Assembly (NCBI RefSeq): GCF_000142905.1
Contig: NW_013657623.1
Span: 70,494-134,493 of the forward strand
Direction: 5' to 3'
DNA length: 64,000 bases
From: Thecamonas trahens ATCC 50062
Lineage: Eukaryota > Protista > Apusomonadida
Shown: in pieces, positions 1-32,115 of the stretch
How positions within the stretch are numbered: position 1 is the first letter of the stretch
Layout: every line of letters begins with the position of its first letter
Translations under genes and position numbers: made by a program
The notes under the pieces: model-generated
Told to the model about the DNA's origin: nothing
Database searches by the model: none
Seen by the model: only the letters and a program-made list of their open reading frames with translations

Positions 1-2263
1 CGCAGCTCGAGTCGTTCCTCATTGTCTCGGCCTCGGCGTACGACGACATTCGCAATGCTATTGTCGACATCAAAAAGTCAGCCGTGGAGCTGGCGCTCAA
101 GCGGCTGCCGTGGCTCATTCTCGACGCCATCGAGAGCGCGTCGGACCACATTGTGGACAACCCGGCGAACATGCTGCGGCTGGTCAAGGAGGTCATTGCC
201 ACGCTCCGCGAGGGCCCGAGCGCTAAGGAGGGCCTCGTCACCCAGTTTACCGCCATCTTTACCGGCTCGGAGCCGCTCTCGTTCGCGTCGCAAGAAGAGG
301 CCGAGGAGGTCATCGAGCATCTAACTGAGGTTTTCAAGAGCGCCGCGTCGCGGGTCCAAGCCGACATTATCAACAAGATCCTGACCAACACCAAGAAGAT
401 CAACTACAACATCGGCCAGATGGTCAAGGAGCGGCTCAAGCCGCATCTCCGCCAGTACGAGGACGATCTCGAGCGGGTCCTCGCCATGAACATCGAGTTC
501 CCGGAGATCAACGCGCCGGACCTCGACGAGTTTGGCGAGGGCATCCAGGCCTCGACGCTCAAGCTTCTCGAGCAGCCGACAACCCGGGCGTGGGCCGTCA
601 AGTGGCTGTTCAAGTTTATTCCGGTCCCGTGGCTCCGCAAGAACAAGGCTTCGACCTACGAAGTTGTCCCCGCTCGCATCCGCGAGGCCTTTGACCAGGG
701 CATCCGGCGGGTCTTTGACTCGACGCTCGAGGCCTCCAAGCAGCTTTCGCACGTCCTCCAGAGGGTCGTCGATGAGTACGGCGGTCAGGTCGAGAACGAG
801 CTCAACAAGCTCATCTCGCGCATCCGTCAGTCGATCGAGAACAAGAAGTCGACCCATGACCGCTCCATCTTTGTCAAGCACCTGTGCGAGGAGCAGCTGT
901 GGAAGCTCGAGGAGTACTACCGCCGGGCCCGCGACCTCGCGGTTCTCCTTGAGGCGCACGGCGGGAGCGGCGAGAGCGAAGACGGCGCGAGCGAGTCGGC
1001 CTCAAGCGAGTCGTCCGCCGGAGGCGGGAGCTCTGCGAGCACAAGCGGAGCAAGCGGAAGCGAAGAGGAGGCCATCGAGTGGGGCAAGAACCCAACAACG
1101 CCACGGTTTAAGCGGTTCGGGTACAAAGTGAGCGTGCCCAAGGCGTCGATCCTCTACCCGCGCCAGCTCTCACGAGTGGTCATTGCCACGGACGTGGCCA
1201 AGCTCCGAGAGGCGTCGCGGGCCAGCGGGAGCGGGAGCGGGAGCGGCAACAGTGCAGGCTCTGTGGCCGGTGGCGGGCGCAAGGTCACGTTTGGCAAGAG
1301 CCGTGTCGGCGCGAGCGCGAGTAGCGGAGGTGCAGGCGCAAGCGGACAGTCGTCGTCGGCGGCTGCGCTCATCGAGTCCAAGTACGGCGGAGTGGGCGTG
1401 AAGAAGAAGACCTCGTACCTCGAGTTCAAGATCAAGTACGGGACGTTCACGGTTGGGCGTGAGCTTGGGCGCGGGGCGTTTGCCACGGTCTACGCTGGTG
1501 AGTACAACGGGCGGCGAGTGGCCATCAAGGACATGCGGATCCGCAAGAACCGTGTGGACGAGGCCATCGGCGAGGTGGAGATCATGTGGAAGCTCTCGCA
1601 CCCGAACCTCGTCGAGTTCCTCGGCTTTTCCTCGCACGGCTCGTCGTTCTTTATTCTTATGGAGCACATGCAGGGCGGCTCGCTCCGAGACTGGTTCAAC
1701 GACCACGAGGGCGACGCGGGAGCCATGAGCTACGGCGACCGGGTTCTCCTCGTCGAGGACATCACTCTCGGACTCGAACACATGCACTCCAAGGGCGTTC
1801 TCCACCGCGACCTCAAGGCCGGGAACGTCCTCCTCGAGGAGAGCGAGGGCCGGCTCCGCGGCAAGCTCTCCGATTTTGGCACGTCCAAGTCGTCGCGGAC
1901 GCCCGTGGCCTCGGTCTACCAGACCGTCAAGGGCACGCCGGTCTACATGCCGCCGGAGCTTCTCTCGTCGTGGGCAAACAGGCGGAACAAGGCCCGATAC
2001 TCGGCAACCATCGACATCTACGCCCTTGCCATGATCATGTTTGAGCTATGGACAACCGCGCCGCTCATCGAGTCGGCCGACCAGTTCAACATCGACGAGA
2101 TCCTCCGCGGCCGGCGGCCCGACTTTCCTCCTGGCTTCCCGCCGAGCACCCGCCGCTCCACGCACTTATCGTCGCGTGCTGGGCCAACGATGCCGGCTCG
2201 CGTCCAAGCGCCGGCGAGGTTGTCAAGCGGCTCAAGGTTGTCCGAGGTGAAATGGGATTGTGA
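1..2263 (+). CDS. 5'-truncated gene: helical stalk paralogous to the CrfC-like dynamin at 27002-32115, Ser/Gly linker, C-terminal TKL-type protein kinase; one-base frameshift near 2138-2140
   Basis: Frame 3 is open from base 3 (QLESFLIVSASAYDD...). Kinase motifs: GRGAFATV, VAIK, HRDLKAGN, DFG, GTPVYMPPE, DIYALAMI. Subdomain XI (LIVACWANDAGSRPS) lies in the shifted frame that ends at TGA 2263; adding one C to TTCCC joins the frames. Confidence 0.85.
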
Positions 2264-2385
2264 TGATATGTTGGTAAAGTGGAGAAAGAAGATGATGGGG
2301 AGGGACATAGAAGAGGAGCATGCATGGTGTGTGTGTGTGTGTGCACGTGTGAAAGAGATCGATCGAGGAGGGTTCAGGCCGAGGC

Positions 2386-2392
2386 AAAAAAA
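2386..2392 (-). terminator. RNA polymerase III oligo-T terminator of tRNA-Ile
   Basis: A7 on the + strand (T7 on the - strand), 2 nt past the discriminator base. Confidence 0.75.
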
Positions 2393-2394
2393 TA

Positions 2395-2467
2395 TGGTCA
2401 GAGCGGGGCTCGAACCCGCGACCGACAGCTTATTAGACTGTCGCTCTACCGACTGAGCTACCCGACC
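2395..2467 (-). tRNA. tRNA-Ile (anticodon AAU)
   Basis: Reverse complement GGTCGGGTAGCTCAGTCGGTAGAGCGACAGTCTAATAAGCTGTCGGTCGCGGGTTCGAGCCCCGCTCTGACCA folds as a cloverleaf: acceptor GGTCGGG/TCTGACC, anticodon stem ACAGT/GCTGT with loop CT-AAT-AA, T-loop TTCGAGC. Confidence 0.95.
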
Positions 2468-21923: not shown

Positions 21924-22429
21924 GTACGTCGACTTGGGTAGTGTGGCCTATGCGAGGGGCACTAGTGTGAGCATGCGTTCTCCCCAGATACCCATACTCT
22001 GCACACTGCTAGTATATACCTAGGCATACCCCGTAGCTGCTTTCCCATTCTCGCCACTCGCCCCATGCGTACATACCAGCCTCTTGTTGTTGCCCTGCCG
22101 GCCGCCGGCTTGGTGATGAATTTGTGACCACTGCCGGACGACCACACACCGTCACCGCACCCGCATATACGATAGCGGGCGATTAGGGACTACCCACACG
22201 GACAGAAGCAAAAACATACCATGGTTACACTCCATGCCAAGTTTCGGCTCTGTTGGTGAGAGTATGCGGTTGGCCGAGCAGGTAGAATGGGCCTGTGCCC
22301 TCCGGGTGGCGGATGCCAATCTTTGTTTGTGTTTGAGTGGAAGGGCTCGGGCATGGGTATGGGCATAGGCATGGGCATGGGCATGGGCATGGGTGTTGAG
22401 GCAGACATGGGACTGACACAAGAGGACAG
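21924..22429 (+). other. Probable 5'-UTR intron of RPL21
   Basis: GTACGT donor (as in the MCM3 and ENKD1 introns) after a pyrimidine-rich leader; CTGAC branch point at 22413; CAG acceptor 9 nt before the ATG. Confidence 0.55.
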
Positions 22430-22438
22430 TAATCAAAG

Positions 22439-22921
22439 ATGCCGCACCACCGTGGTTACCGCATGGGCACCCGCCACATGTTCTCGCGTGGCTTCCGCAA
22501 GCACGGCAACATCGGCCTCAAGACGTACCTTCAGCAGTACAAGATCGGCGACTTCGTCGACATCAAGGTCAACGCTGCCCAGCACAAGGGTATGGCGCAC
22601 AAGTTCTACCATGGCCGCACTGGCCGCGTCTTCAACGTCGACAAGCGTGGCGTCGGTGTCATCGTCAACAAGCTCGTCCGCAACCGCATCCTCCGCAAGA
22701 AGATCTCGGTCCGCATTGAGCACATCAAGCCGTCCAAGTGCCGTGACGAGTTTGTCAACCGCGTCAAGGAGAACGCCCGCATCACCTCGGCGGCCAAGGC
22801 CCGTGGCGAGAAGGCCCACCCCAAGCGCCAGCCCGCCGGCCCGCGCGAGGGCTTCACCGTCAAGACCGACATTGCCGAGGTCGAGGACATCGCTCCGCTC
22901 GCCTACGAGAACCTGTTCTAA
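22439..22921 (+). CDS. RPL21: 60S ribosomal protein eL21
   Basis: GYRMGTRHMFSRGFRKHG...YKIGDFVDIK...HKFYHGRTGRVFNV...RIEHIKPSKCR. Confidence 0.98.
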   Translation: MPHHRGYRMGTRHMFSRGFRKHGNIGLKTYLQQYKIGDFVDIKVNAAQHKGMAHKFYHGRTGRVFNVDKRGVGVIVNKLVRNRILRKKISVRIEHIKPSKCRDEFVNRVKENARITSAAKARGEKAHPKRQPAGPREGFTVKTDIAEVEDIAPLAYENLF

Positions 22922-23014
22922 GCCATAAACGTAGGAAACAAAAACCACCTTGATCTTCAAATCCCTCTTCCCTCTTCCCTCTGTCCTCGGTCCGTTCCTG
23001 GTCACCATCGTCGT

Positions 23015-24319
23015 TTACACCGTCGCCATCATGTCCGCCACGTGGACTGCTAGCGACGCCTCGCGCGAGTGCAGTGTCTGCGCCTGCCGCAGGACCCGTA
23101 GCGACTGCGCGAGGGCGGCAAGCTCGCTGGTTGTTGCACCCGCGAGTTTCTCAAGCGAGGTCGCGACGCTGCGGGCGATAGGCGCAGCGGGAGCGAGGCC
23201 GCGGACGACAACATCGAGTTCGTGCCGGGCGTCTCCGAGCGCGCGGCTGAGCGACGCCTCGTCGACTGCCACCTGTTCGAGCGGCATGTGCGCGGTGGTG
23301 TGTGCGATGGCGGTGCCGATCTCACTATATGCAGCCTCAAGGGCGGGGAGCTTTCGGCTGACCGCGAGGGCTGGGCCGCGGGCAGCGGCGACGACGTTCT
23401 GGACCCGGTCGAGGGCGGCGAGCTGGCTGAGGGCGGCGCGGCGGGCGGCGGCGAGCTCGCGTGCCCGGTCGAGGGCTGCCTGCAGCGCGACAACAGTCTC
23501 GAACGCCTCGACTTGCTGCACGCGCCGCGCGGCCTCCAGCTTGGCAAGGACAAAGTGCCAATGGAGCTCGGTCGAGGCGAGGAGGTCGAGCTCGCGCTTG
23601 GCGGTGGCACCGACTCGCGATGCGCGGTTGCGAGCAGCCTCGTTGCGGATCGATGACTGTGGTGTGGGACGAGCGCGGGCAGCGTCCTGGCGTGCAGCCG
23701 ACTTGGGCGCAGCCCGCCGCTTGCCGGTCGATGCAAAGTTGAGGACCCGCTTGGTGGCGGCCATCGACGGCGTGGCCGGCGCGGCCGGCGCAGGCGCAGC
23801 GGGAGCCGCCGCAGCCGACCGTTTTGTCGAGTTGCGGAACCGCGACGCCACGGGCTTGGCTTTGCGGCTGGTGCTCCGTGCAGCGCGGAAGGCTGCAAGC
23901 GCCGCCGCCCGGTCTGCCGGCGTCTCGGCCGCAGCAGGGCGGCGCATGACCCGCAAGCCTGATGGAGTATGTCTTGTCGGCGAGGAGGCCACAGGCAGTG
24001 CCGCCGGCGCTGGCCTACTTACCGGCTTGGTTGCCTGCTTACGACGGCTCTTCTTGACCGACGACCGTGGCTGGCCGGCGCGCGGGCTGGCCTTTCGCGC
24101 CGCTTGCTTGCGCGAGGCTGAGCGGAATCTCGAGGCGACGGCCTTGCGCTTGCGGCGCTTCTTGCCGGTCGACGGTGGCGGGGCAGCGGCAGCGGCGGCA
24201 AACGAGACCTCCATCGATGCGTCGTACGATCGATCGAGGTCTGGAATGGACGAGATCGACGAGTCACACGAGTCGGCCGCTCGAGCTGGTGTGTTGAACG
24301 ATAGAAACGATGAGGCCAT
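23015..24319 (-). CDS. Augmin subunit 8 (HAUS8/QWRF)-like protein; start may lie further upstream (about 24390)
   Basis: Basic low-complexity N-terminus, then LLASTELHWHFVLAKLEAARRVQ (cf. L..LQWRF.NARA) and AYSEIGTAIAHTTAHMPL (cf. AL.AST.RLP). Confidence 0.6.
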   Translation of the reverse strand: MASSFLSFNTPARAADSCDSSISSIPDLDRSYDASMEVSFAAAAAAPPPSTGKKRRKRKAVASRFRSASRKQAARKASPRAGQPRSSVKKSRRKQATKPVSRPAPAALPVASSPTRHTPSGLRVMRRPAAAETPADRAAALAAFRAARSTSRKAKPVASRFRNSTKRSAAAAPAAPAPAAPATPSMAATKRVLNFASTGKRRAAPKSAARQDAARARPTPQSSIRNEAARNRASRVGATAKRELDLLASTELHWHFVLAKLEAARRVQQVEAFETVVALQAALDRARELAAARRAALSQLAALDRVQNVVAAARGPALAVSRKLPALEAAYSEIGTAIAHTTAHMPLEQVAVDEASLSRALGDARHELDVVVRGLAPAAPIARSVATSLEKLAGATTSELAALAQSLRVLRQAQTLHSREASLAVHVADMMATV

Positions 24320-27001
24320 CGGGGTCTTGTTCACCACCCGTCGCGGTGTCGGCGGCAGCGCATCCAAGTCGACCACCGGCGCGGCACCATAGCGGGCCAC
24401 AGCCGGATTAGATGGCAGGCGTGGCTGGAACGAAGCAAAGGCAGAGCTATGAAATCCGAGGTGAGCACGATACGTATGTGTGTATGCGTGGAGAGCGACC
24501 GAGCGAGAGCGAGATGGACGCCAGTGTCGGGAGATCGTGCGCGTTGATGGTTGTCGGTGTCGGTGTCGGTGTTGGTGTCGGTGTCCATGTCGGTGTCGGT
24601 GTCCATGTCGGTGTCCGCCCAGCCCCATTGCCATCCCAGCCAACACATCATCCACCACATCATCATCATCATCATCACAATGAGTCCCCCCCCCCCCTCC
24701 CCCCCTTCCGCGCTTTCTCATACGGCATCCCACGTACAGATCGGTTGCCGGCGAAGCAGTGGCAAACGTCCCACCCACAGCTTTTCCTCCTCCACACACA
24801 TCTGCTTCCGGAGATGACCGTAGCGGCTTGACCACCCCTGCCTGCGCTCCCTGGACCAGAGGCCGACTTGTCGTCAAGCAGACCACCGACCCGCGCCGCC
24901 CGTACCTGTCCAACCCCATGACCATATGAATAGTGAGTGAGTAGGGGGGGGGGGGAAAGGGGGGGGAGGGGGGGGGGAGGGCAGGGCACGTACAGTGAGC
25001 TCATCCAGTGCAGTGTGTTGCTGCCTGCACGGCTCGGCCTCTCCTTGGCTCGTCGGCTCGTCGGCTCGTCGTCCGGTGGTGGTCAGTCAGCTAGCTAGTT
25101 GGGCTGGTTGAGCGGTTGGCGGGCGGGCTGGCTGAGCGGTTGGTTGGTGGTGGCGGAGCTGATGCTGATGCTGCTACTGCTACTGCTACACTGCGATCAG
25201 TCCTCTCCGGTCACGGGCAAATGACTTTCAAGCCGTAGATCCTCCTTGCCTTGCCGATCACCTAACACTTGACCGTGCTGATCACCTCGCTGTCGTGATG
25301 ATCATGGTCCATGTCGTACCTACCTACGGCCATCATTCCCTCATTCACCCTTTCCCTCCTCATTCCAACCATGGCCATCGTGCTCTGTCTAGCCATCCCT
25401 ATGCACTCTATACACTCCCCCCCCCTCCCCCCTCCTTCTCCCAAACCCGATCGCATGGCAAAGTCCGATCGGATCGACCCGATTGCAGCCCTCTCACCCT
25501 AGCCAACCACACAGCTGTGTACAGTGCTCGACGTATCCACCTCTCTCACCTTCCCCTTCCTTTCCCCCCCTTTTTTTTGATATTGGTACGATAACAATCA
25601 CACAGCCTCAAAATTGCACAGCCACCCATGGTTGCAACAAGGACGTAATGATGAACGAATCATAGACCTGTTCCTATGCGGGAGTACCCCCATGCGGACT
25701 AACATGCTTCTGGCACCTGTACTGAACCTTCTTGTTGTATCCATTTTGGCCCTTTACCCCCCACATCATCTCTATCCCCCTCCCCCTTCTTCTTCTCCCC
25801 CGTCTTCTTCTCCCCCGTCATACAATTGTGTTAATCCCACAAAAAATACTCACACCCTTTTCCCACACTCCCCCCTCGTACACAGCCATGGCCTGACCCC
25901 CACCCCCTTCCAACCCCTCCGACCCCTCCGACCCCCTCCTGACACTCTCTACACCCTCTCTCTCTCGCCGGTGTCTCTACATACCGTATCCCCTCTCCGC
26001 CCCCCTCCTCCCCTCAAATCACCGACTCTTTCGACTCGGTCCGTCGTCTTGGTACGCTCTCACGTGCCCAAGACCCCCCCCCCTCCCCCTCTCTCCTCCT
26101 CCCCTCCCCCCATCACCCCCCGCATCACCCCTTGCCCATGACGACGAACTTGTTCTGGAACCTCTCCATGTCAGTCAACTAGAAATTCGAATCCCGAGGC
26201 ACAATCTCATTCTCTCTCTCTTGCTTCCCTGCCCCCCATCCCTCCCTCCCCTTCCCCTCTCTCCCACCCACTTACCCCTCTCTCAGCCGATCTCCCTCTC
26301 CCTCCCTCTCTCCTCCTCCGATCGTTATCCCGATGTGATCCCGATGTCCACAGGTATGTCCACCCTCTTCCTATCTCTTTCCGCTGCCATTTCTACGTTC
26401 GCTGCGTTGATGATCATCCGAGGCATTTGTCTGAACCGGACGACTGGCGGAGAAGGTGATCCAGGAGCGGGCAGATCTCCCTTTGGGAGTTCTGCTTGTG
26501 GTACTCATGTTTTATGAGCCCGTGCTTCTGGTTCGCCTTCTCTTGCCTCGTCCACCTATGCTGACAAATAGATGACGAATCTGAGCTCGATCACCCCCCT
26601 CCCTCGCTCTCTCTTCCCCCCCTCCCCCCCCTTCCCTCTACATCCCCAATCCATCATCCAACTCACTCTCTCACTGATCATCACAGATCCCCTCTTCGTA
26701 TTCCCTTCACTTCCTCCCCAACTCCCTCACCCCCTTCAACGCGTACGTCCATCACTCTCTTCCTCTCCCGCCCCCCTGGCCGCACATCAAGACGATGATG
26801 ATAACTCTGTTCCTCGAACATACCCTAACGCCGTCCACGTCAATGCTGTGGCGACATGAGGACATTTTCTCACTATCCATAGAATCGGAGTTCTTGATTT
26901 CCCCTCCTCCTTGCCTCGCTTCCTCTTCTTCATCTACTCACCTACTTCTGCCTTTGCTCGTTTACAGCAGCCGTATTCATTAACACCCATCATTGTCATT
27001 G

Positions 27002-30000
27002 TCACACCGCTTGCGTGATTGCAGAGTCGACAAACACGTCATCCACCTCGGAGTAGTCGGAGCTGAGCGGGCAGAGCTCCGAGTGGATTGGCGGCACGAG
27101 GAGGACGTCGAGGTCGATGAGCGACGACAGCGAGGCCTCGGACGAGGCTGGGATCTCGGCGTCAAACTCAAGCATGTTGATCAGTGACTGCGCCCGGACC
27201 CAGAACTCATTCAGCCGCCAGATCCCGTCCTCGGCCGCTGCGGCCTCGGCAAGTGACGCCTCGCGCGAGATAAGTTTGCGGTCGGCTGCCGCCTGGATCG
27301 ACGACAGCAGAGAAGCGAGGACATCTGACACCGCACTTGCGTACGATGCTAGCATCGCCGTCAGTGCAGACGCACAGTGCTGCTCCGCAGCCAAAACAAG
27401 CTCCCGGAGCGCTCCATCCATCTGCCGGCAAAAGTACGCTTGCAGCGCATCCTTGGACACGCACCACCGGCTCTTCGACTTGACCTTGACCGCCTTTTTG
27501 AGCGACCAGGAGAAGCCGAGCGATCGCGACGTCCGCTCCTCCAGCAGCTCGCTCCGCTGGCAAAAGTGACCCGCCTCGCTGTTGTTGTCGTCGTCGTTAC
27601 TGCTTCCGCCGCCTCTCCCCGATGACAGCAGCTCGAGCGAGGTCTGCAGCGCGTCTGGCTCCAGCCCGAGCTCCGGAAAGGCCACCGACACGTCGAGCAG
27701 CTCCGAGACCATGATCCGATACTGTGCAAGTAGTGGTGCAAGATGCTTCTCCACAAGCGCCTTCAGCTGGACAGAGACTGGCTTTGTCACCGCCACCAGC
27801 TCGGCCACCATGTCGTTGCGCGCAGACTGGAGCGCGAGCTCAAACAGAACCGCCACCTCGTCCAGCCAGTCGAGCGCCGCATCCTTGGTCTCAAACACAA
27901 ACTGGCCCGACGACAGCACACACTGCGTCACCGAGCCCTCATTCTCGCTCTCGCTCTCGCTGCTGCCGCCGAGCACCTCGTCGTTCGTCTCAAAGTCAAA
28001 CACGTGCTCCATCATCACCACCAGCGACGTCGGCGCCTGCGGCAGCTGCCGCACCCATTCGCTTCGCACAGAGCACCACATGGCAAACAGCCGCTGCCCG
28101 CCAGGCGTAAACACATTGTCGAGCTGCGTGAGAAAGACGCCGAGGCTCTTGTCCAGCTGCGAAACCACGATCTGCCCGCCGGCCTCCAGGACCTTGCCTA
28201 GCGCTTCGTTGATCTGCTCGTGGTTGACCTCGGAGACGACCAGGAACGTCTGCAGCGACGCCAGTGACGTCGAGCACACCGCCAGCTCATCCACCAGGCG
28301 CGCCCGGAGCGGGAGCGCCACATGTTGCACCAGCTTGGCCAGAGACGCCCGAAGCGCAATGGTCGTCGCGTTCGCGTAGCAGTACTGGAGCATCGACTCG
28401 AGTGGCGCCTCGAGCCGCGACGCCGCGTACACTGCCCGCGTTCCCATCCGGAACGCTTCCACCTCGCCGCGCTCCACCATCCGCGGGTAATTGTGCGGCG
28501 CGTCCCATGTCTCGCCATACGCAATTCGCGCAAACGCCTCCACCCACGGCTCGTCCGCCGCTGCAGGCACCTGCCACGGGTGGCTCCGCGCGTAGTTCCG
28601 CGCGTGGTTCGCAAGCTGGGCGTACTTGGCCGAGACCGGAAAGACCCGCGATGGAGGCACGCTGCACGACGCCAGCGCCGCAGTCACCGACTGCGCCACA
28701 TACTGCCGCACCCCAGCCTCGTCTAGATCTTGTCCGGACGCCTCGTTCCGCTGGTCAAACTTGTTGACAAACACAAAGGCGTCCTGCTTGAGCACAGACA
28801 GCACCGAAGACACCTTGTCCTGCAACTCAGCCTCGGCTGTCCCGTTGAGGCTCGCAAAGTCGAGCACCAGCGCAACCACAGACGCCTGCTGCAAAATGCC
28901 CTCCACAAACGCAGACAGTACAGGCATGTCCATCTCGTTTGGCCCGGGCGAGTCGATGAACGAGAGCGTGCCTGAGAGTGCCAGCAGTGCCCGCACGTCG
29001 GCCTCGGCCTCTCTGCTGCTCTCGACCTCGACCTGGTCTTCGGTCTCTGTCTCGATCTTGACCTCGACCTCAGCGTGGCAAGGCACGTCGGCTTCCTCCC
29101 CTTCATCCTCGTCGTCCGAGTCCGAGAGCGATATTCCGATCGAGGAGCACGACGAGTCGCCGCGCTCACGGAATGCCCCGACATCGCCCTCGTCAACGCC
29201 ACCAAACTCGCCGCTGCCCTCGCTCTCACCCACCACCAGCGAGGCAAAGCAAACCAGAATTTGCGGGAGGTCAACAAGCGCGAGCGGGCGCGGGCCCGGC
29301 GACGACGACAAGTCGCTCTGCGGCGGCGGCGCCTCACTGGCGGCGCCCGATGTGATCTTGACCACCTGGTCGAGAATGCCGGCCCGGGCGCCAGCACGAA
29401 AAATGTCGTTGACCTTGACAAGCGTCGCGTTGATGGCAGCCTCGCCGGCCACGGTGTACTCGCCGGCGTAGCTGTCAAACCAACCGAGCGCGGCACCCGG
29501 CGTGCCTGCTGGCGCCGTCAACTCGGTCACCAGCGACGACGACGCGCCCATGTCGAGGTCCTCAAACGCGGCGGCGCCCGGTGCGAAGAGCGCCGCCCTC
29601 AGTTGGATCACCAGCATTCGCAGCGTCTCAACACACGATGCCGGCAGCCGGAGGGTAGGCTCATGCTTGGTCGGGTCGTGTGTGATAAGGGTAGGGAGGA
29701 CAGTCATGGCTGTTGCTCGCGACGGCACCACGTCGGCGCCGACCAGGCCCGAGATGGTCGACGACTTGCCGGCATTCATCACGCCCACCACTCCGACGTA
29801 AGTGTTCGACGAGACAACGTCGACCGCCAGCTCGTGGAGGACCGCCGGGAGCTGCGCTGCCAGCGTGTCGAGCAGCGGCAGATGCACCATGTCGCGAAGG
29901 AGCGACTCAAGGAGAGCGCAGAGAGTGACAAGCTCCTTCTGGAAGGTGACCGTCTCGAGCACCGCCCGCGCCGCGCCTGCGGCGTCGTCGTCGCGCGCCG

Positions 30001-32115
30001 CCGCCGAGGCTGCAAAATACTGTGAGAGCGCGGCGTACTTGGCGGTGATCCGAGACACCAGATCCACTAGGCCGGCGTCGGGGATCCGCGGCGAGCCCGG
30101 GTTACGCCCGCCGTGGTGCGATGCGGCCCGCGGGCGGACCGGGGTCACAGCCGGCGCAGGCCTTTCGATCAGATCCATAAAGGCCTGCAACGCAGTCCGC
30201 CCGTCCGACAGCTGCATCGTCTCAAGCAAGGCCTGCGTCGAGTCGTGGAGGACATAGCACGGAGTGTATACAGCGCCAAACGCGGTTTCGGGATCCGACA
30301 GCACCTTGGGCTTGAGAAGAAAGAGATGCAGCCGTCGCGCGCTTGGCAGTAGCGACAGCGCCGCAGCTTGGCCACCAAGCACAGGCACTTTGCGGGTGAG
30401 CAGCTCGATGACCATGCATGCCAGCTCGGCAGTCATGAGCGGGACAGTGTCGTCAAAGAGAACCGCAAACCGGGAGAGGCGAAGCGGGTGACAAGCTGCG
30501 CAAGCAGGGCGCTGTTGGCGGGCTCGAGCCCGAGGCGCAACAACCACGCAAGTGCTGCAGACGCCTGTGCCGTGTTGACTTCGTACACTAGCGCGTCCGA
30601 GAATGTCGCCGACGACGCTGTCCTCAGCAGCGCCAGAAAGACGCATGGAGGAACGCTGTCCTCGAGCAGCGCCAGCGACGCCAGCCCGCTGATCGGCTCG
30701 GCCGAGAAGGCTCCTAGGTGGACTGCAGGCAGCGTGACTTGCAGCGAGTTGGCCGGTGAGACTCGTTGCGCCCGCACTGTGCACCACTTTGCCCAGACTC
30801 TGGCCACCGTTGCCTGCTCGGCCTCACTTCCGGCGACCACAATTGTGACGCCGTCGAGATCCGACACCATCAGCGGGGCGTTGTCGGTGCTTCGCAGCAC
30901 AAGCGGAGCAAGCTCGTTTGACTTGCTTGCCACTCGCCAGAGTGAAAAGTGCAGCGCCGAGGTGTGCAGGGCGTGCTCGGCGAGGATGGCCGGGATGGCC
31001 GAGGCAACTGTCGCTGCAGAGAGCACAAACATTACGGTCCACAGTGGACTCGCAGGTGTTGTGCTATCGCGATCAACAGGCACCGACTCTAGCAGCGCCC
31101 ATGGCGAATCGGTAGCCGAGCGCTCTGCCTTGCCAAATGCAACAAAGGTGATCGTTACAGGGAGTGCTGCTTGCGCCGGTAGGCGGCGCGGAGGTGACGG
31201 CTCGGGATTGGCGGTCGCGATGGACGGGCTCGCGCTCGGCTCCAGCGACCGTGACCGCTGGATGGCCGACCGGGCTGAGAGCAGGGCGCGCTTGCTCTGC
31301 TTCGATGGCAGCGCTACTGCTCGTTGGCGCATGCGCCGCCGCGAGAGCATGGGGTCAAGCGGAGCCCGCACAATTCGCGGGCCGCCGCCGTACTTGGCCA
31401 CCACGTAGTCCCAAGCCTCAAACGAGACTACACGCGCGTGCGGTACCGACGCCGCCACATGCGAAAGAAGCGGTGCAGTGCTGACCGGCGGTGGCGGCGG
31501 CCCGCAGCGACCGACATGGGCCATCCACTGCTGGAACCAGTCGGCGGGGAGAAGGCAACCGTGGCCGGTCGGAGTCAGAGCCCGGCGTGCGACGTCGATT
31601 TCGACATCATCGACTTCTTGCCCATCTCGATCACCTTGGAACTCGCCATCCAAGCCCCTCTTATCCCCAGCTTCCATCATTCTCGCTGCGGCAACGGCCC
31701 TGATCTCGGCGCTGGACGTTGATGCGTTCAGAATGTCTCTCTCCACCTCTACACCCGACGCCGTTGTGATTCTCCTTGCTCCGATCCGTCTGCGCGAAGA
31801 CGCTGATGGCGACGACGATGGCGACGAGACAAACGATGCAGCCCCAGCCCGAGCCCCAGCCCCCGTCCCAGCCCCAGCCCCCGTCCCAGCCCCAGCAGCG
31901 GCCGTAGATAGCGGAATCGACGTCACATTCGATGACGAGGACGACGATGAGCCGTGTAGCAAGCCATGGGTATTCCCTTGTCTTCTTCCGTCTTGATCAT
32001 TCCTGCTTCCCTCAGCTGAGGGTGATCCAGCACTCTCAGCACCATTTGATGATGGGCTGGTAGAGATGGTTGACAAGGTGGTAACTCGTCGTAGTCTCCG
32101 GTTGAACAGAGCCAT
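27002..32115 (-). CDS. DUSP domain + CrfC/YjdA-type (bacterial dynamin-like) GTPase + helical stalk; one-base frameshift near 30488
   Basis: DUSP: LLPADWFQQW..PPPVSTAPL..VSFEAWDYVVAKYGGGPRIVR. GTPase: G1 VGVMNAGKSS, VPSRATAMTVLPTLI, G3 FIDSPGPNE, G4 FVNKFDQ, VFPVSA. ORFs 30433-32115 and 27002-30787 join by adding one base. Confidence 0.82.

What the first reader, a model, noticed from the sequence alone, without database searches (positions are those of the whole stretch)
27002..32115. Bacterial CrfC/YjdA-type dynamin-like GTPase in a eukaryote, fused to a DUSP domain
Seen in sequence: G1 VGVMNAGKSSTISGLVGADVVPSRATAMTVLPTLITH, G3 FIDSPGPNE, ASVVALVLDF, G4 FVNKFDQ, VFPVSAKYAQLANHAR, WVEAFA and YANATTIALR. 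Established knowledge: these follow my recollection of E. coli CrfC/YjdA (GTMKAGKSTTINAIVG..LPNR..MTALPTLI; LDTPGPNE; VNKFDQ; IFPVSS..LANRAR; WVEDFA; YANASLYALR) much more closely than eukaryotic dynamin, mitofusin or atlastin. Upstream is a DUSP domain, normally found in USP4/11/15 deubiquitinases, but no USP catalytic domain is present. Inference: a bacterial-type dynamin, horizontally acquired or anciently retained, has been recruited into eukaryotic ubiquitin or membrane signalling.
Basis: partly seen in the sequence, partly recalled or inferred. Interest (0 to 1): 0.85.

Follow-up and report, generated by a model that had tools for sequence, protein, structure and literature searches.

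The report
Bacterial-type dynamin GTPase fused to DUSP
A marine protist (Thecamonas trahens) carries a large GTPase of a bacterial type (E. coli CrfC/YjdA/RdcA) joined to a eukaryotic DUSP domain; three sister genes in the same genome also carry a protein kinase, a domain combination not found described in the papers searched.

Summary
The window is Thecamonas trahens ATCC 50062, and the stretch is gene AMSG_10125. Every quoted motif is present.

- **N-terminus:** it holds a DUSP domain by Pfam, by a profile search of PDB sequences and by a confident AlphaFold model. There is no USP catalytic domain.
- **C-terminus:** it matches the CrfC model (E 3.5e-42). In a tree it sits with bacterial CrfC/YjdA-type proteins (96/99), away from this organism's own dynamins and FZL-like proteins.
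- **Fold:** BDLP/mitofusin/SynDLP-like, with intact G1-G4 motifs and no hydrophobic paddle.
- **Frameshift near 30488:** it is a one-base difference in a G run. Two other data sets carry an extra G, which gives one 1704-aa ORF. The annotated 68-nt intron is probably an artefact.

New here:
- The genome has four paralogs. Three end in a TKL kinase; this copy has none.
- Close relatives were found only in a few environmental contigs.
- Bacterial relatives are almost always followed by yjcZ. Thecamonas has no yjcZ.

Horizontal transfer from bacteria is the likelier origin because the distribution is so narrow. Nesting inside bacteria is not statistically proven (AU p 0.23).

The function is inferred: a soluble regulatory GTPase, not a proven membrane remodeller.

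The parts
27002..32115 (-). Whole gene (AMSG_10125). It is one open frame of 1704 codons once the extra base seen in other data sets is counted. The start codon is uncertain: ATG at 32115, or the annotated ATG at 31680.
31366..31557 (-). DUSP domain
   Evidence: Pfam PF06337, E 8.6e-7. Own-genome scan hit at C57:101859-102050. Profile of A3 against PDB: USP11 DUSP-UBL, E 3.4e-9. AF2 pLDDT about 90 here, and the top 19 Foldseek rows are all USP15/11/4 DUSP(-UBL).
30832..31155 (-). Possible ubiquitin-like (beta-grasp) domain after the DUSP, as in the DUSP-UBL of USP4/11/15. Not established.
   Evidence: The AF2 secondary structure runs strand-strand-helix-strand-strand-strand, but pLDDT is only 50-60. 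Foldseek alignments to DUSP-UBL span about 275 columns at weak E of 0.05-0.2. No sequence match to a UBL.
29921..30831 (-). Helical linker region conserved among the paralogs. It spans the frameshift site.
   Evidence: alignments A2/A4 and the script alignment
30485..30488 (.). Site of the one-base difference. The window has GGG on the + strand; other data sets have GGGG.
   Evidence: read-laying table 4: extra G behind 30485 in X3 (metatranscriptome contig covering 30473-30654) and X5 (941-nt contig covering 29927-30866)
30425..30492 (-). 68-nt GT..AG 'intron' of the public gene model. Probably an annotation artefact that bridges the frameshift.
   Evidence: P0001 lacks 23 residues that align to conserved columns in all paralogs. 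The X5 contig runs through it unspliced.
28568..29809 (-). Dynamin-type GTPase domain: G1 GVMNAGKS at 29762-29785, G3 DSPGPNE at 28934-28954, G4 NKFDQ at 28751-28765.
   Evidence: (invariant G1, G2 Thr, G3 and G4 columns)
29045..29344 (-). Acidic, low-complexity insert of about 100 aa, predicted disordered, between G2 and G3.
   Evidence: pLDDT below 50. G1-G3 spacing is 277 aa against about 160-166 in most relatives.
27158..28573 (-). Helical neck/trunk (stalk) of BDLP/mitofusin type. A basic, Trp-containing beta-hairpin lies at 27455-27544.
   Evidence: AF2 model; Foldseek and VIA-align matches; CrfC model positions up to 694 of 742
84..2456 (+). 3' part of paralog B (dynamin stalk plus protein kinase), about 25 kb away and convergent with this gene. 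A family member, not part of this gene.

Best explanation
This is one intron-less gene of the apusomonad Thecamonas trahens. It encodes a protein of about 1700 aa. The N-terminus has a DUSP domain, a possible UBL and a helical linker. The C-terminus has a complete bacterial-type dynamin-like GTPase of the CrfC/YjdA/RdcA clade. The break between the two ORFs is a one-base homopolymer difference in the reference assembly, not an intron and not a gene boundary.

The GTPase module most likely entered the apusomonad lineage from bacteria. It lost its bacterial partner gene yjcZ, was fused to eukaryotic DUSP and TKL-kinase modules, and was duplicated to four copies. This copy is the one without a kinase.

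The way it works is inferred. GTP binding and hydrolysis drive G-domain dimerisation and oligomerisation and a stalk rearrangement, as elsewhere in the dynamin superfamily. The output is regulatory or scaffolding rather than membrane insertion, by analogy with soluble RdcA, which turns GTP state into activation of the enzyme DgcE. The DUSP end would recruit a partner. The protein may pair with its kinase-bearing paralogs.
For: Shown:
- Identity and gene model.
- Extra G in two other data sets, and a 1704-codon frame that is colinear with the paralogs through the supposed intron.
- The same DUSP-dynamin fusion inside single unbroken ORFs: paralogs C and D, and an environmental TARA scaffold.
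- DUSP by three methods.
- CrfC model match at E 3.5e-42.
- BLASTP to the Salmonella CrfC ortholog at E 6e-27, against E of 0.015 or worse to this organism's own dynamins, its FZL-like proteins and Anabaena BDLPs.
- Careful ML tree: eukaryote clade 100/100, sister to bacterial P0037 at 99/95, and the CrfC-like clade including it at 96/99.
- 74 of 81 bacterial loci, and P0037, have a yjcZ-like gene directly downstream, so these really are yjdA-yjcZ systems.
- All G motifs are intact.
- AF2 model with pLDDT 77.9 and pTM 0.74 has a BDLP/SynDLP/mitofusin fold.
- No hydrophobic paddle, unlike the BDLP and FZL-like controls.
- Three paralogs and P0003 carry a kinase.
- Relatives at E 1e-58 or better in 1.8 billion representatives were only Thecamonas and four environmental sequences, one of them bacterial (P0007).

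From papers: RdcA is soluble and dimerises or oligomerises, and its GTPase state controls DgcE together with RdcB (PMC6510439). CrfC lacks a membrane-binding motif and forms oligomers (PMC6374313).
Against: - No functional data exist for any family member, so the mechanism rests on analogy.
- Nesting inside bacterial diversity is not significant. The AU test does not reject a monophyletic bacterial group (p 0.231), so ancient inheritance with massive loss is not excluded by the tree.
- The CrfC model score (144.6 bits) is far below the equivalog cut-off (1146). This is a distant clade member, not an ortholog.
- The RNA evidence is contigs only. They show presence in RNA libraries but not a full-length transcript.
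- The X3 contig overlaps the indel by only about 12 nt on one side, and the X5 library type is unknown.
- The UBL and helical-linker models have low confidence.
- A basic Trp-containing hairpin at the stalk tip could still bind membranes peripherally.
Confidence: 0.6

Rival explanations
1. It is a membrane-remodelling dynamin that works like BDLP, mitofusin or FZL in fusion, fission or tethering. The DUSP domain would bring it to a particular organelle or ubiquitin-related site.
For: The best structural matches are mitofusin-1 (Z 22.3), SynDLP (Z 21.4) and BDLP (Foldseek E 7e-8; 513 residues aligned by VIA-align). A basic, Trp-containing beta-hairpin sits at the stalk tip.
Against: There is no hydrophobic paddle or transmembrane segment in the stalk, whereas the Anabaena BDLP and Thecamonas FZL-like controls have one. 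The sequence clade is that of CrfC/RdcA, which is described as soluble and lacking a membrane-binding motif (PMC6374313, PMC6510439). Three paralogs carry kinases, which points to signalling.
Confidence: 0.15
2. The module was inherited vertically from the first eukaryotes or from the mitochondrial ancestor, and was lost almost everywhere except in apusomonads.
For: The AU test does not reject a tree in which all sampled bacterial CrfC-like proteins form one group with the eukaryote clade outside it (p 0.231). The eukaryote stem branch is long, about 1.5 changes per column.
Against: An exhaustive HMMER search of 1.8 billion representatives (the source collection includes EukProt) listed only Thecamonas and a few unnamed environmental sequences as close relatives, and no other eukaryote was identified. 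The word-index search, limited to proteins of about 1030 aa or more, named no other eukaryote either. The free ML tree places the clade beside one bacterial yjdA-yjcZ system at 99/95.
Confidence: 0.12
3. In the sequenced strain the gene really is frameshifted. It would then be a pseudogene, or two separate products: a DUSP protein and a GTPase started from an internal codon.
For: The reference assembly reads GGG. The X5 contig differs from the window at one further base (30381), so it may come from another strain or be error-prone at depth 2.5.
Against: Two independent data sets agree on GGGG. Both halves keep long open frames with conserved motifs. The 23 residues in question align with conserved paralog columns. 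Homopolymer miscounts are a common assembly error (general knowledge).
Confidence: 0.08

Closest known systems
E. coli CrfC / YjdA / RdcA (NCBIfam NF007368) and its bacterial relatives encoded in yjdA-yjcZ operons
   Same: - The G-domain signatures are shared: a G-x-M-K/N-A-G-K-S P-loop, the M-T-x-x-P-T G2 stretch, D-S/T-P-G-P-N-E, N-K-F-D-Q, F-P-V-S and W-V-E/D-x-F.
- The similarity extends into the C-terminal helical half.
- There is no hydrophobic paddle.
- They form one clade in the tree.
   Different: - The score is far below the equivalog cut-off (144.6 against 1146 bits).
- There is no yjcZ partner anywhere in the genome.
- A eukaryotic N-terminus of about 730 aa with a DUSP domain replaces the short bacterial N-terminus.
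- No clamp-binding-like motif was found by a simple pattern, in this protein or in the Salmonella ortholog.
- There is an acidic insert of about 100 aa in the G domain.
- Its paralogs carry a kinase.
BDLP (Nostoc), SynDLP, IniA and mitofusin/Fzo1 (solved structures)
   Same: The overall fold is shared: a G domain plus helical bundles built from N- and C-terminal helices.
   Different: Sequence similarity is limited to the P-loop (E of 0.015 or worse). It falls in a separate clade. It has no paddle or transmembrane region.
USP4 / USP11 / USP15 N-terminal DUSP-UBL module
   Same: The DUSP domain is recognisable by sequence and by fold, with the typical Y-G-G-G-P motif. Thecamonas's own USPs have the same motif.
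   Different: There is no USP catalytic domain, and the UBL is only suggested. Here the DUSP heads a GTPase rather than a deubiquitinase.
ROCO proteins (Roc GTPase-COR-kinase, e.g. LRRK2): an analogy in working principle only
   Same: In the paralogs, a GTPase and a TKL-type kinase sit in one polypeptide.
   Different: There is no homology of the GTPase, which is dynamin-type rather than Ras-like Roc, and there is no COR domain. This particular copy has no kinase.

Membership tests
CrfC/YjdA/RdcA-type dynamin-like GTPase (NF007368) | Score at or above the curated equivalog cut-off of the family model | tested here: not met
   144.6 bits against a cut-off of 1146, though E is 3.5e-42 over model positions 228-694. 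It is a distant relative, not an ortholog.
CrfC/YjdA/RdcA-type dynamin-like GTPase (NF007368) | Groups with yjdA-type proteins to the exclusion of other dynamin-superfamily classes | tested here: met
   The clade holding the eukaryote group and 39 bacterial CrfC-like rows has support 96/99. The group is sister to P0037 at 99/95. BLASTP gap: E 1e-22 to 1e-32 against E of 0.015 or worse.
CrfC/YjdA/RdcA-type dynamin-like GTPase (NF007368) | Partner gene yjcZ (rdcB) next to it or elsewhere in the genome | tested here: not met
   74 of 81 bacterial loci have it. There is no PF13990 match in the Thecamonas genome. hhalign of the family against a YjcZ alignment gives probability 0.1.
CrfC/YjdA/RdcA-type dynamin-like GTPase (NF007368) | N-terminal beta-clamp-binding motif (41-QLALP in E. 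coli, PMC6374313) | tested here: not met
   A simple pattern finds none upstream of the P-loop. It also finds none in the Salmonella ortholog or other relatives, so this is probably not a family-wide feature.
CrfC/YjdA/RdcA-type dynamin-like GTPase (NF007368) | Soluble, with no membrane paddle or transmembrane segment | tested here: met
   No hydrophobic window in the stalk. The BDLP and FZL-like controls are positive.
CrfC/YjdA/RdcA-type dynamin-like GTPase (NF007368) | GTP hydrolysis and homo-oligomerisation | not testable with these tools
   Only the intact G1-G4 motifs can be shown.
Dynamin superfamily (Pfam PF00350) | Dynamin_N match over the gathering score, G1-G4 motifs, and a G domain plus helical stalk fold | tested here: met
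   31.9 bits against a cut-off of 27; invariant G motifs; fold matches.
DUSP domain (Pfam PF06337) | Match over the gathering score, and the DUSP fold | tested here: met
   29.8 bits against a cut-off of 29.3, which is marginal; the paralogs score 32-36 bits. PDB profile hit to USP11 at E 3.4e-9. AF2 pLDDT is about 90 and all top Foldseek rows are DUSP.
USP4/11/15-type deubiquitinase | USP (UCH) catalytic domain with Cys and His boxes | tested here: not met
   There is no such Pfam match in either ORF. The organism's true DUSP-USPs do show the Cys box.
Mitofusin / FZL / BDLP class | Hydrophobic paddle or transmembrane region, and grouping with that class in a tree | tested here: not met

The most novel reading that the evidence does not exclude
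The four Thecamonas genes and their environmental relatives would form a previously unrecognised class of eukaryotic GTPase-kinase signalling proteins, built from a horizontally acquired bacterial RdcA-type GTP-sensing dynamin. In this reading the dynamin module's nucleotide state gates a fused TKL kinase, in the way RdcA gates DgcE. The DUSP end docks the complex on a partner. The kinase-less copy studied here would act as a regulatory subunit that pairs with the kinase-bearing paralogs through G-domain dimerisation.
Probability: 0.25. Interest if true: 0.75.

Novelty: new variant of a known kind. Interest (0 to 1): 0.6.

Why it matters
Surveys of the eukaryotic dynamin superfamily have concentrated on the 'core' dynamin classes. 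PMC10280142 explicitly leaves out mitofusins and BDLPs, and PMC11326297 does not mention this type. I found no paper that names this gene or this domain combination.

If the reading holds, it adds a CrfC/RdcA-type lineage to the eukaryotic dynamin repertoire. It is also a clear case of a bacterial module being rebuilt by fusion to eukaryotic signalling domains (DUSP, TKL kinase). Finally, it gives a second, independent context in which to ask what CrfC/RdcA-type GTPases do. In E. coli that question is still disputed between chromosome partitioning and c-di-GMP signalling (PMC6510439).

The limits are a very narrow taxonomic range and no functional data.

Tried and rejected
- **YjcZ/RdcB fused into the eukaryotic protein.** Rejected. 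There is no phmmer hit, hhalign probability is 0.1, and the genome has no PF13990 match.
- **A decayed kinase downstream of this copy.** Rejected. tblastn of three paralog C-termini against 22000-27100 gives nothing better than E 0.3.
- **The 68-nt GT..AG intron of the public model.** Judged an artefact.
- **Giant-virus origin.** The IMG/VR scan gave a single locus that groups with a Pantoea crfC, so there is no support.
- **More eukaryotic members in JGI metagenomes.** The best 80 loci were all bacterial-type at 25-38% identity. Some carry gut-metagenome titles; they were not used further.
- **Direct PDB sequence search.** It gave only weak P-loop matches to Drp1 (E 0.3), and no CrfC-type structure appeared among them.
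- **ESM Atlas.** The feature search of the N-terminus gave no usable hit. The 'atlas' fold library was unavailable.
- **Proof that the clade is nested inside bacteria.** The AU test was not significant (p 0.231).
- **First homolog search.** It was swamped by low-complexity words, with only 2 hits among 8000 candidates. The exhaustive search replaced it.
- **Handling of the joined sequence.** The read-through protein, with one base added as seen in the reads, was built and used only inside scripts.
Full report
**What is there**

The region holds two long minus-strand ORFs: 30433..32115 (560 aa) and 27002..30787 (1261 aa). They overlap in different frames.

A homolog search identified the source. 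A 100% identical database protein is AMSG_10125 of Thecamonas trahens ATCC 50062. It is 1536 aa, lies on a 255-kb contig, and is called 'uncharacterized protein' or 'DUSP domain-containing protein'. The host is an apusomonad, a free-living marine flagellate.

The window is not bacterial contamination. The DUSP family matched none of 14 prokaryotic control genomes. Base composition is even along the window.

**One gene or two**

The public model joins the ORFs by removing a 68-nt GT..AG segment, 30492..30425 on the minus strand.

Contigs of public runs tell a different story. A 941-nt contig of a small data set labelled with one organism (X5, 29927-30866) crosses the site unspliced. A seawater metatranscriptome contig (X3, 30473-30654, otherwise identical) runs across the supposed 5' splice site, 19 nt into that segment. 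Both carry one extra G behind 30485, in the G run at 30486-30488.

With that base the two ORFs become one frame of 1704 codons with a single terminal stop. The 23 residues that the public model deletes then align, without a gap, to a conserved stretch in all paralogs. The public protein shows a 25-column hole there.

I conclude that the reference has a homopolymer miscount, or the strain a polymorphism, and that the 'intron' is an annotation work-around.

Some caveats apply:
- X3 overlaps the indel by only about a dozen bases on one side.
- The library type of X5 is not on record.
- Contigs cannot prove a full-length transcript.

Contigs identical to the gene occur in the RNA libraries over both halves: 27056-27906, 28607-28850, 30000-30224, 30793-31033 and 31432-31804. 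This is compatible with expression but does not prove it.

**Independent support for the fusion**

Scanning the organism's own genome with the CrfC model and the DUSP model found the same combination in other places.
- A single unbroken 1661-aa ORF on contig C2 has DUSP at 30-144 and Dynamin_N at 646-876 (paralog C).
- A 1828-aa ORF on C2 has both domains (paralog D).
- A TARA Oceans scaffold encodes an unbroken 2031-aa ORF with DUSP, dynamin and kinase (P0003).

**The N-terminus**

DUSP is supported in three ways.
- Pfam, at a marginal 29.8 bits against a cut-off of 29.3. The paralogs score 32-36 bits.
- A profile of the family's N-termini against PDB sequences hits USP11, USP4 and USP15 DUSP(-UBL) at E 3e-9 to 1e-5.
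- An AlphaFold model has pLDDT of about 90 over residues 41-105. All of its top 19 Foldseek rows are USP15/11/4 DUSP or DUSP-UBL structures.

The organism's genuine DUSP-USPs share the Y-G-G-G-P motif and, unlike this protein, carry the USP Cys box. No USP catalytic domain is present here.

A ubiquitin-like domain after the DUSP is suggested by the predicted strand-helix pattern and by alignments that span DUSP-UBL. Confidence is low, with pLDDT of 50-60. I treat it as possible only.

Between it and the GTPase lies a helical region conserved among the paralogs. It has no match elsewhere.

**The GTPase**

NCBIfam's CrfC model matches at E 3.5e-42 over positions 228-694 of 742, well beyond the G domain. 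The score is far below the equivalog cut-off.

An exhaustive HMMER search of 1.8 billion representatives gave 717 hits at E 0.001 or better.
- First come five sequences at E 1e-58 to 1e-79. They are one Thecamonas paralog, three environmental sequences of the same family, and a bacterial tandem-GTPase protein (P0007) whose gene is followed by yjcZ.
- The rest of the 150 listed rows are mostly about 800 aa long. The ones I checked are bacterial dynamin-family proteins.

Named bacterial relatives include the Enterobacteriaceae crfC/yjdA orthologs (Salmonella, Enterobacter, Kosakonia), Paenibacillus, Negativicutes, Gallionella, Anabaena and Acidobacteriota.

In 74 of 81 of these loci a yjcZ-like ORF follows directly. 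The same is true for P0037 and P0007. They are therefore bona fide yjdA-yjcZ (rdcA-rdcB) systems.

An alignment of 85 sequences keeps the P-loop, the G2 threonine, D-x-x-G and N-K-x-D invariant.

By BLASTP the dynamin part hits the Salmonella ortholog at E 6e-27. It hits Thecamonas's own classical dynamins, its three FZL-like proteins and Anabaena BDLPs only at E 0.015 or worse, through the P-loop alone.

**Tree**

I built a careful ML tree of 60 rows and 458 columns under LG+C20+F+G4 (PMSF). It included:
- the six eukaryotic family members;
- 39 bacterial CrfC-like proteins;
- Thecamonas classical dynamins, an EHD-like and three FZL-like proteins;
- Anabaena and Paenibacillus dynamin-like proteins of other types.

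One duplicate Gallionella row was left out. The results were:
- the eukaryotic family is one clade (100/100);
- it is sister to bacterial P0037 (99/95);
- the whole CrfC-like group including it is separated from everything else (96/99).

The stated refutation, that the GTPase groups with mitofusin or another ordinary eukaryotic family, therefore fails.

An AU test did not reject a tree in which all bacterial CrfC-like rows are held together (lnL difference 5.7, p 0.231). The tree alone does not prove that the eukaryote clade arose from within bacterial diversity. Several outgroup rows have very long branches, so deep relations among the classes should not be read from this tree.

**Structure**

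AlphaFold on the 972-aa dynamin part, with the 85-row alignment, gave mean pLDDT 77.9 and pTM 0.74. The model has a G domain followed by long helical bundles and two small beta-hairpins. It also has a disordered acidic insert.

Foldseek ranks BDLP, SynDLP, IniA and LeoA first (E 7e-8 to 3e-5), then dynamin and mitofusin. VIA-align gives Z 22.3 to the mitofusin-1 minimal domain, 21.4 to SynDLP, and 16.1 to BDLP over 513 residues.

A hydropathy scan finds no hydrophobic segment in the stalk, and none in bacterial CrfC-like proteins. Anabaena BDLPs and the Thecamonas FZL-like proteins show the expected paddle or transmembrane segment. This agrees with descriptions of CrfC/RdcA as soluble and lacking a membrane-binding motif (PMC6374313, PMC6510439).

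**The family**

Thecamonas has four paralogs.
- **A** is this gene: DUSP and dynamin.
- **B** lies about 25 kb away on the same contig and is convergent with A. Its kinase end is window 84-2456. It has dynamin and kinase, with no DUSP detected.
- **C** is annotated 'TKL protein kinase' (XP_013762825.1): DUSP, dynamin and kinase.
- **D** has DUSP and dynamin, with a kinase in the next, overlapping ORF.

A has no kinase. Its frame ends at 27002. It is followed by about 2 kb without a long ORF on its strand, and no kinase remnant is detectable.

Outside Thecamonas I found only P0003 (75% identical to C in the G domain), P0005 and the fragment P0006, all environmental. A second named-protein search, limited to proteins of about 1030 aa or more, found no other named eukaryote. 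A metagenome scan returned only bacterial-type loci. The IMG/VR scan returned one bacterial-like locus.

No yjcZ homolog exists in the Thecamonas genome or inside these proteins.

**How it most likely works**

Shown:
- an intact dynamin-type G domain with a BDLP-like stalk;
- no paddle;
- a DUSP head;
- kinase-bearing sister genes.

Inferred:
- nucleotide-dependent G-domain dimerisation and stalk rearrangement, which is the general rule in the dynamin superfamily;
- a regulatory rather than membrane-inserting output, by analogy with RdcA. RdcA dimerises or oligomerises, and its GTP state decides whether it binds and activates the diguanylate cyclase DgcE together with RdcB (PMC6510439). In Thecamonas the partner enzyme appears to have been fused on, as a kinase, and the RdcB partner lost;
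- a role for the kinase-less copy as a pairing partner or competitor of its paralogs. Bacterial dynamin-like proteins often act in pairs (PMC6104087).

I put about 0.95 on the single-gene DUSP-dynamin fusion, about 0.9 on CrfC-clade affinity, about 0.75 on bacterial-to-apusomonad transfer, and about 0.4 on the regulatory mechanism as worded.

**Comparison and novelty**

It works like, and is related to, CrfC/RdcA. It is not an ortholog: it scores below the cut-off, has no yjcZ, and has a different N-terminus. It shares a fold but not a clade with BDLP and mitofusin. Its DUSP is the USP4/11/15 kind without the protease. The paralogs' GTPase-plus-TKL-kinase layout recalls ROCO proteins in principle only.

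No paper in the searchable library names the gene, its paralog, or a DUSP-dynamin-kinase architecture. The recent dynamin surveys I read do not cover this type.

I class it as a new variant of a known kind. It is interesting for dynamin evolution and for the open question of what CrfC-type GTPases do. Its narrow taxonomic range and the absence of functional evidence limit it.

Noticed in passing
window 84-2456 (+); full gene is G000:C57:66722-72949 (L032:1223-7447): Paralog B is a 2075-aa open frame with a CrfC-like dynamin (the best CrfC-model hit in the genome, 185 bits) and a C-terminal protein kinase. No DUSP was detected. It lies about 25 kb from the gene studied and is convergent with it.
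   Followed up: partly
G000:C2:521729-528630 (L031) and G000:C2:552684-558361 (L030): Paralogs D and C form a second pair, also one on the + strand and one on the - strand, about 24 kb apart. This mirrors the B/A pair on contig C57, so an old segmental duplication of a gene pair is possible. The tree gives B with D, but A does not pair with C.
   Followed up: no
L031:8201-8216: Paralog D's kinase lies in a separate ORF that overlaps the end of the DUSP-dynamin ORF by 16 nt in another frame. This may be another assembly frameshift or a short intron, like the one at 30485-30488.
   Followed up: no
L008, L009, L010 (G000 contigs C13, C1, C28): Thecamonas also has three FZL/BDLP-like dynamins with G-E/N-F-N-x-G-K-S P-loops. 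The two scanned (L008, L009) have a hydrophobic paddle-like segment. The three lie near the Anabaena BDLPs in the tree, though not as one clade.
   Followed up: partly
window 27056-31804 (pieces): Seawater metatranscriptome runs of one study hold contigs 99-100% identical to this gene. Thecamonas trahens or a near-identical strain was therefore present in those samples.
   Followed up: no
L034 (P0007), P0160, P0161, P0002: Bacterial CrfC-like proteins come in further architectures. There is a tandem double-GTPase form of about 1190 aa followed by yjcZ, and a 932-aa form ending in an FHA domain.
   Followed up: no
L115 (IMG/VR UViG 2529292882_000013): A contig filed as viral carries a crfC-yjcZ-like pair closest to that of a Pantoea chromosome. 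It is possibly a prophage-borne or mis-binned bacterial segment.
   Followed up: no
window 31683-32115 (-): The open frame extends 145 codons upstream of the annotated start, through Ser/Ala/Gly-rich low-complexity sequence, to an ATG at 32115. A metatranscriptome contig (31432-31804) reaches upstream of the annotated ATG. The true start is unresolved.
   Followed up: no
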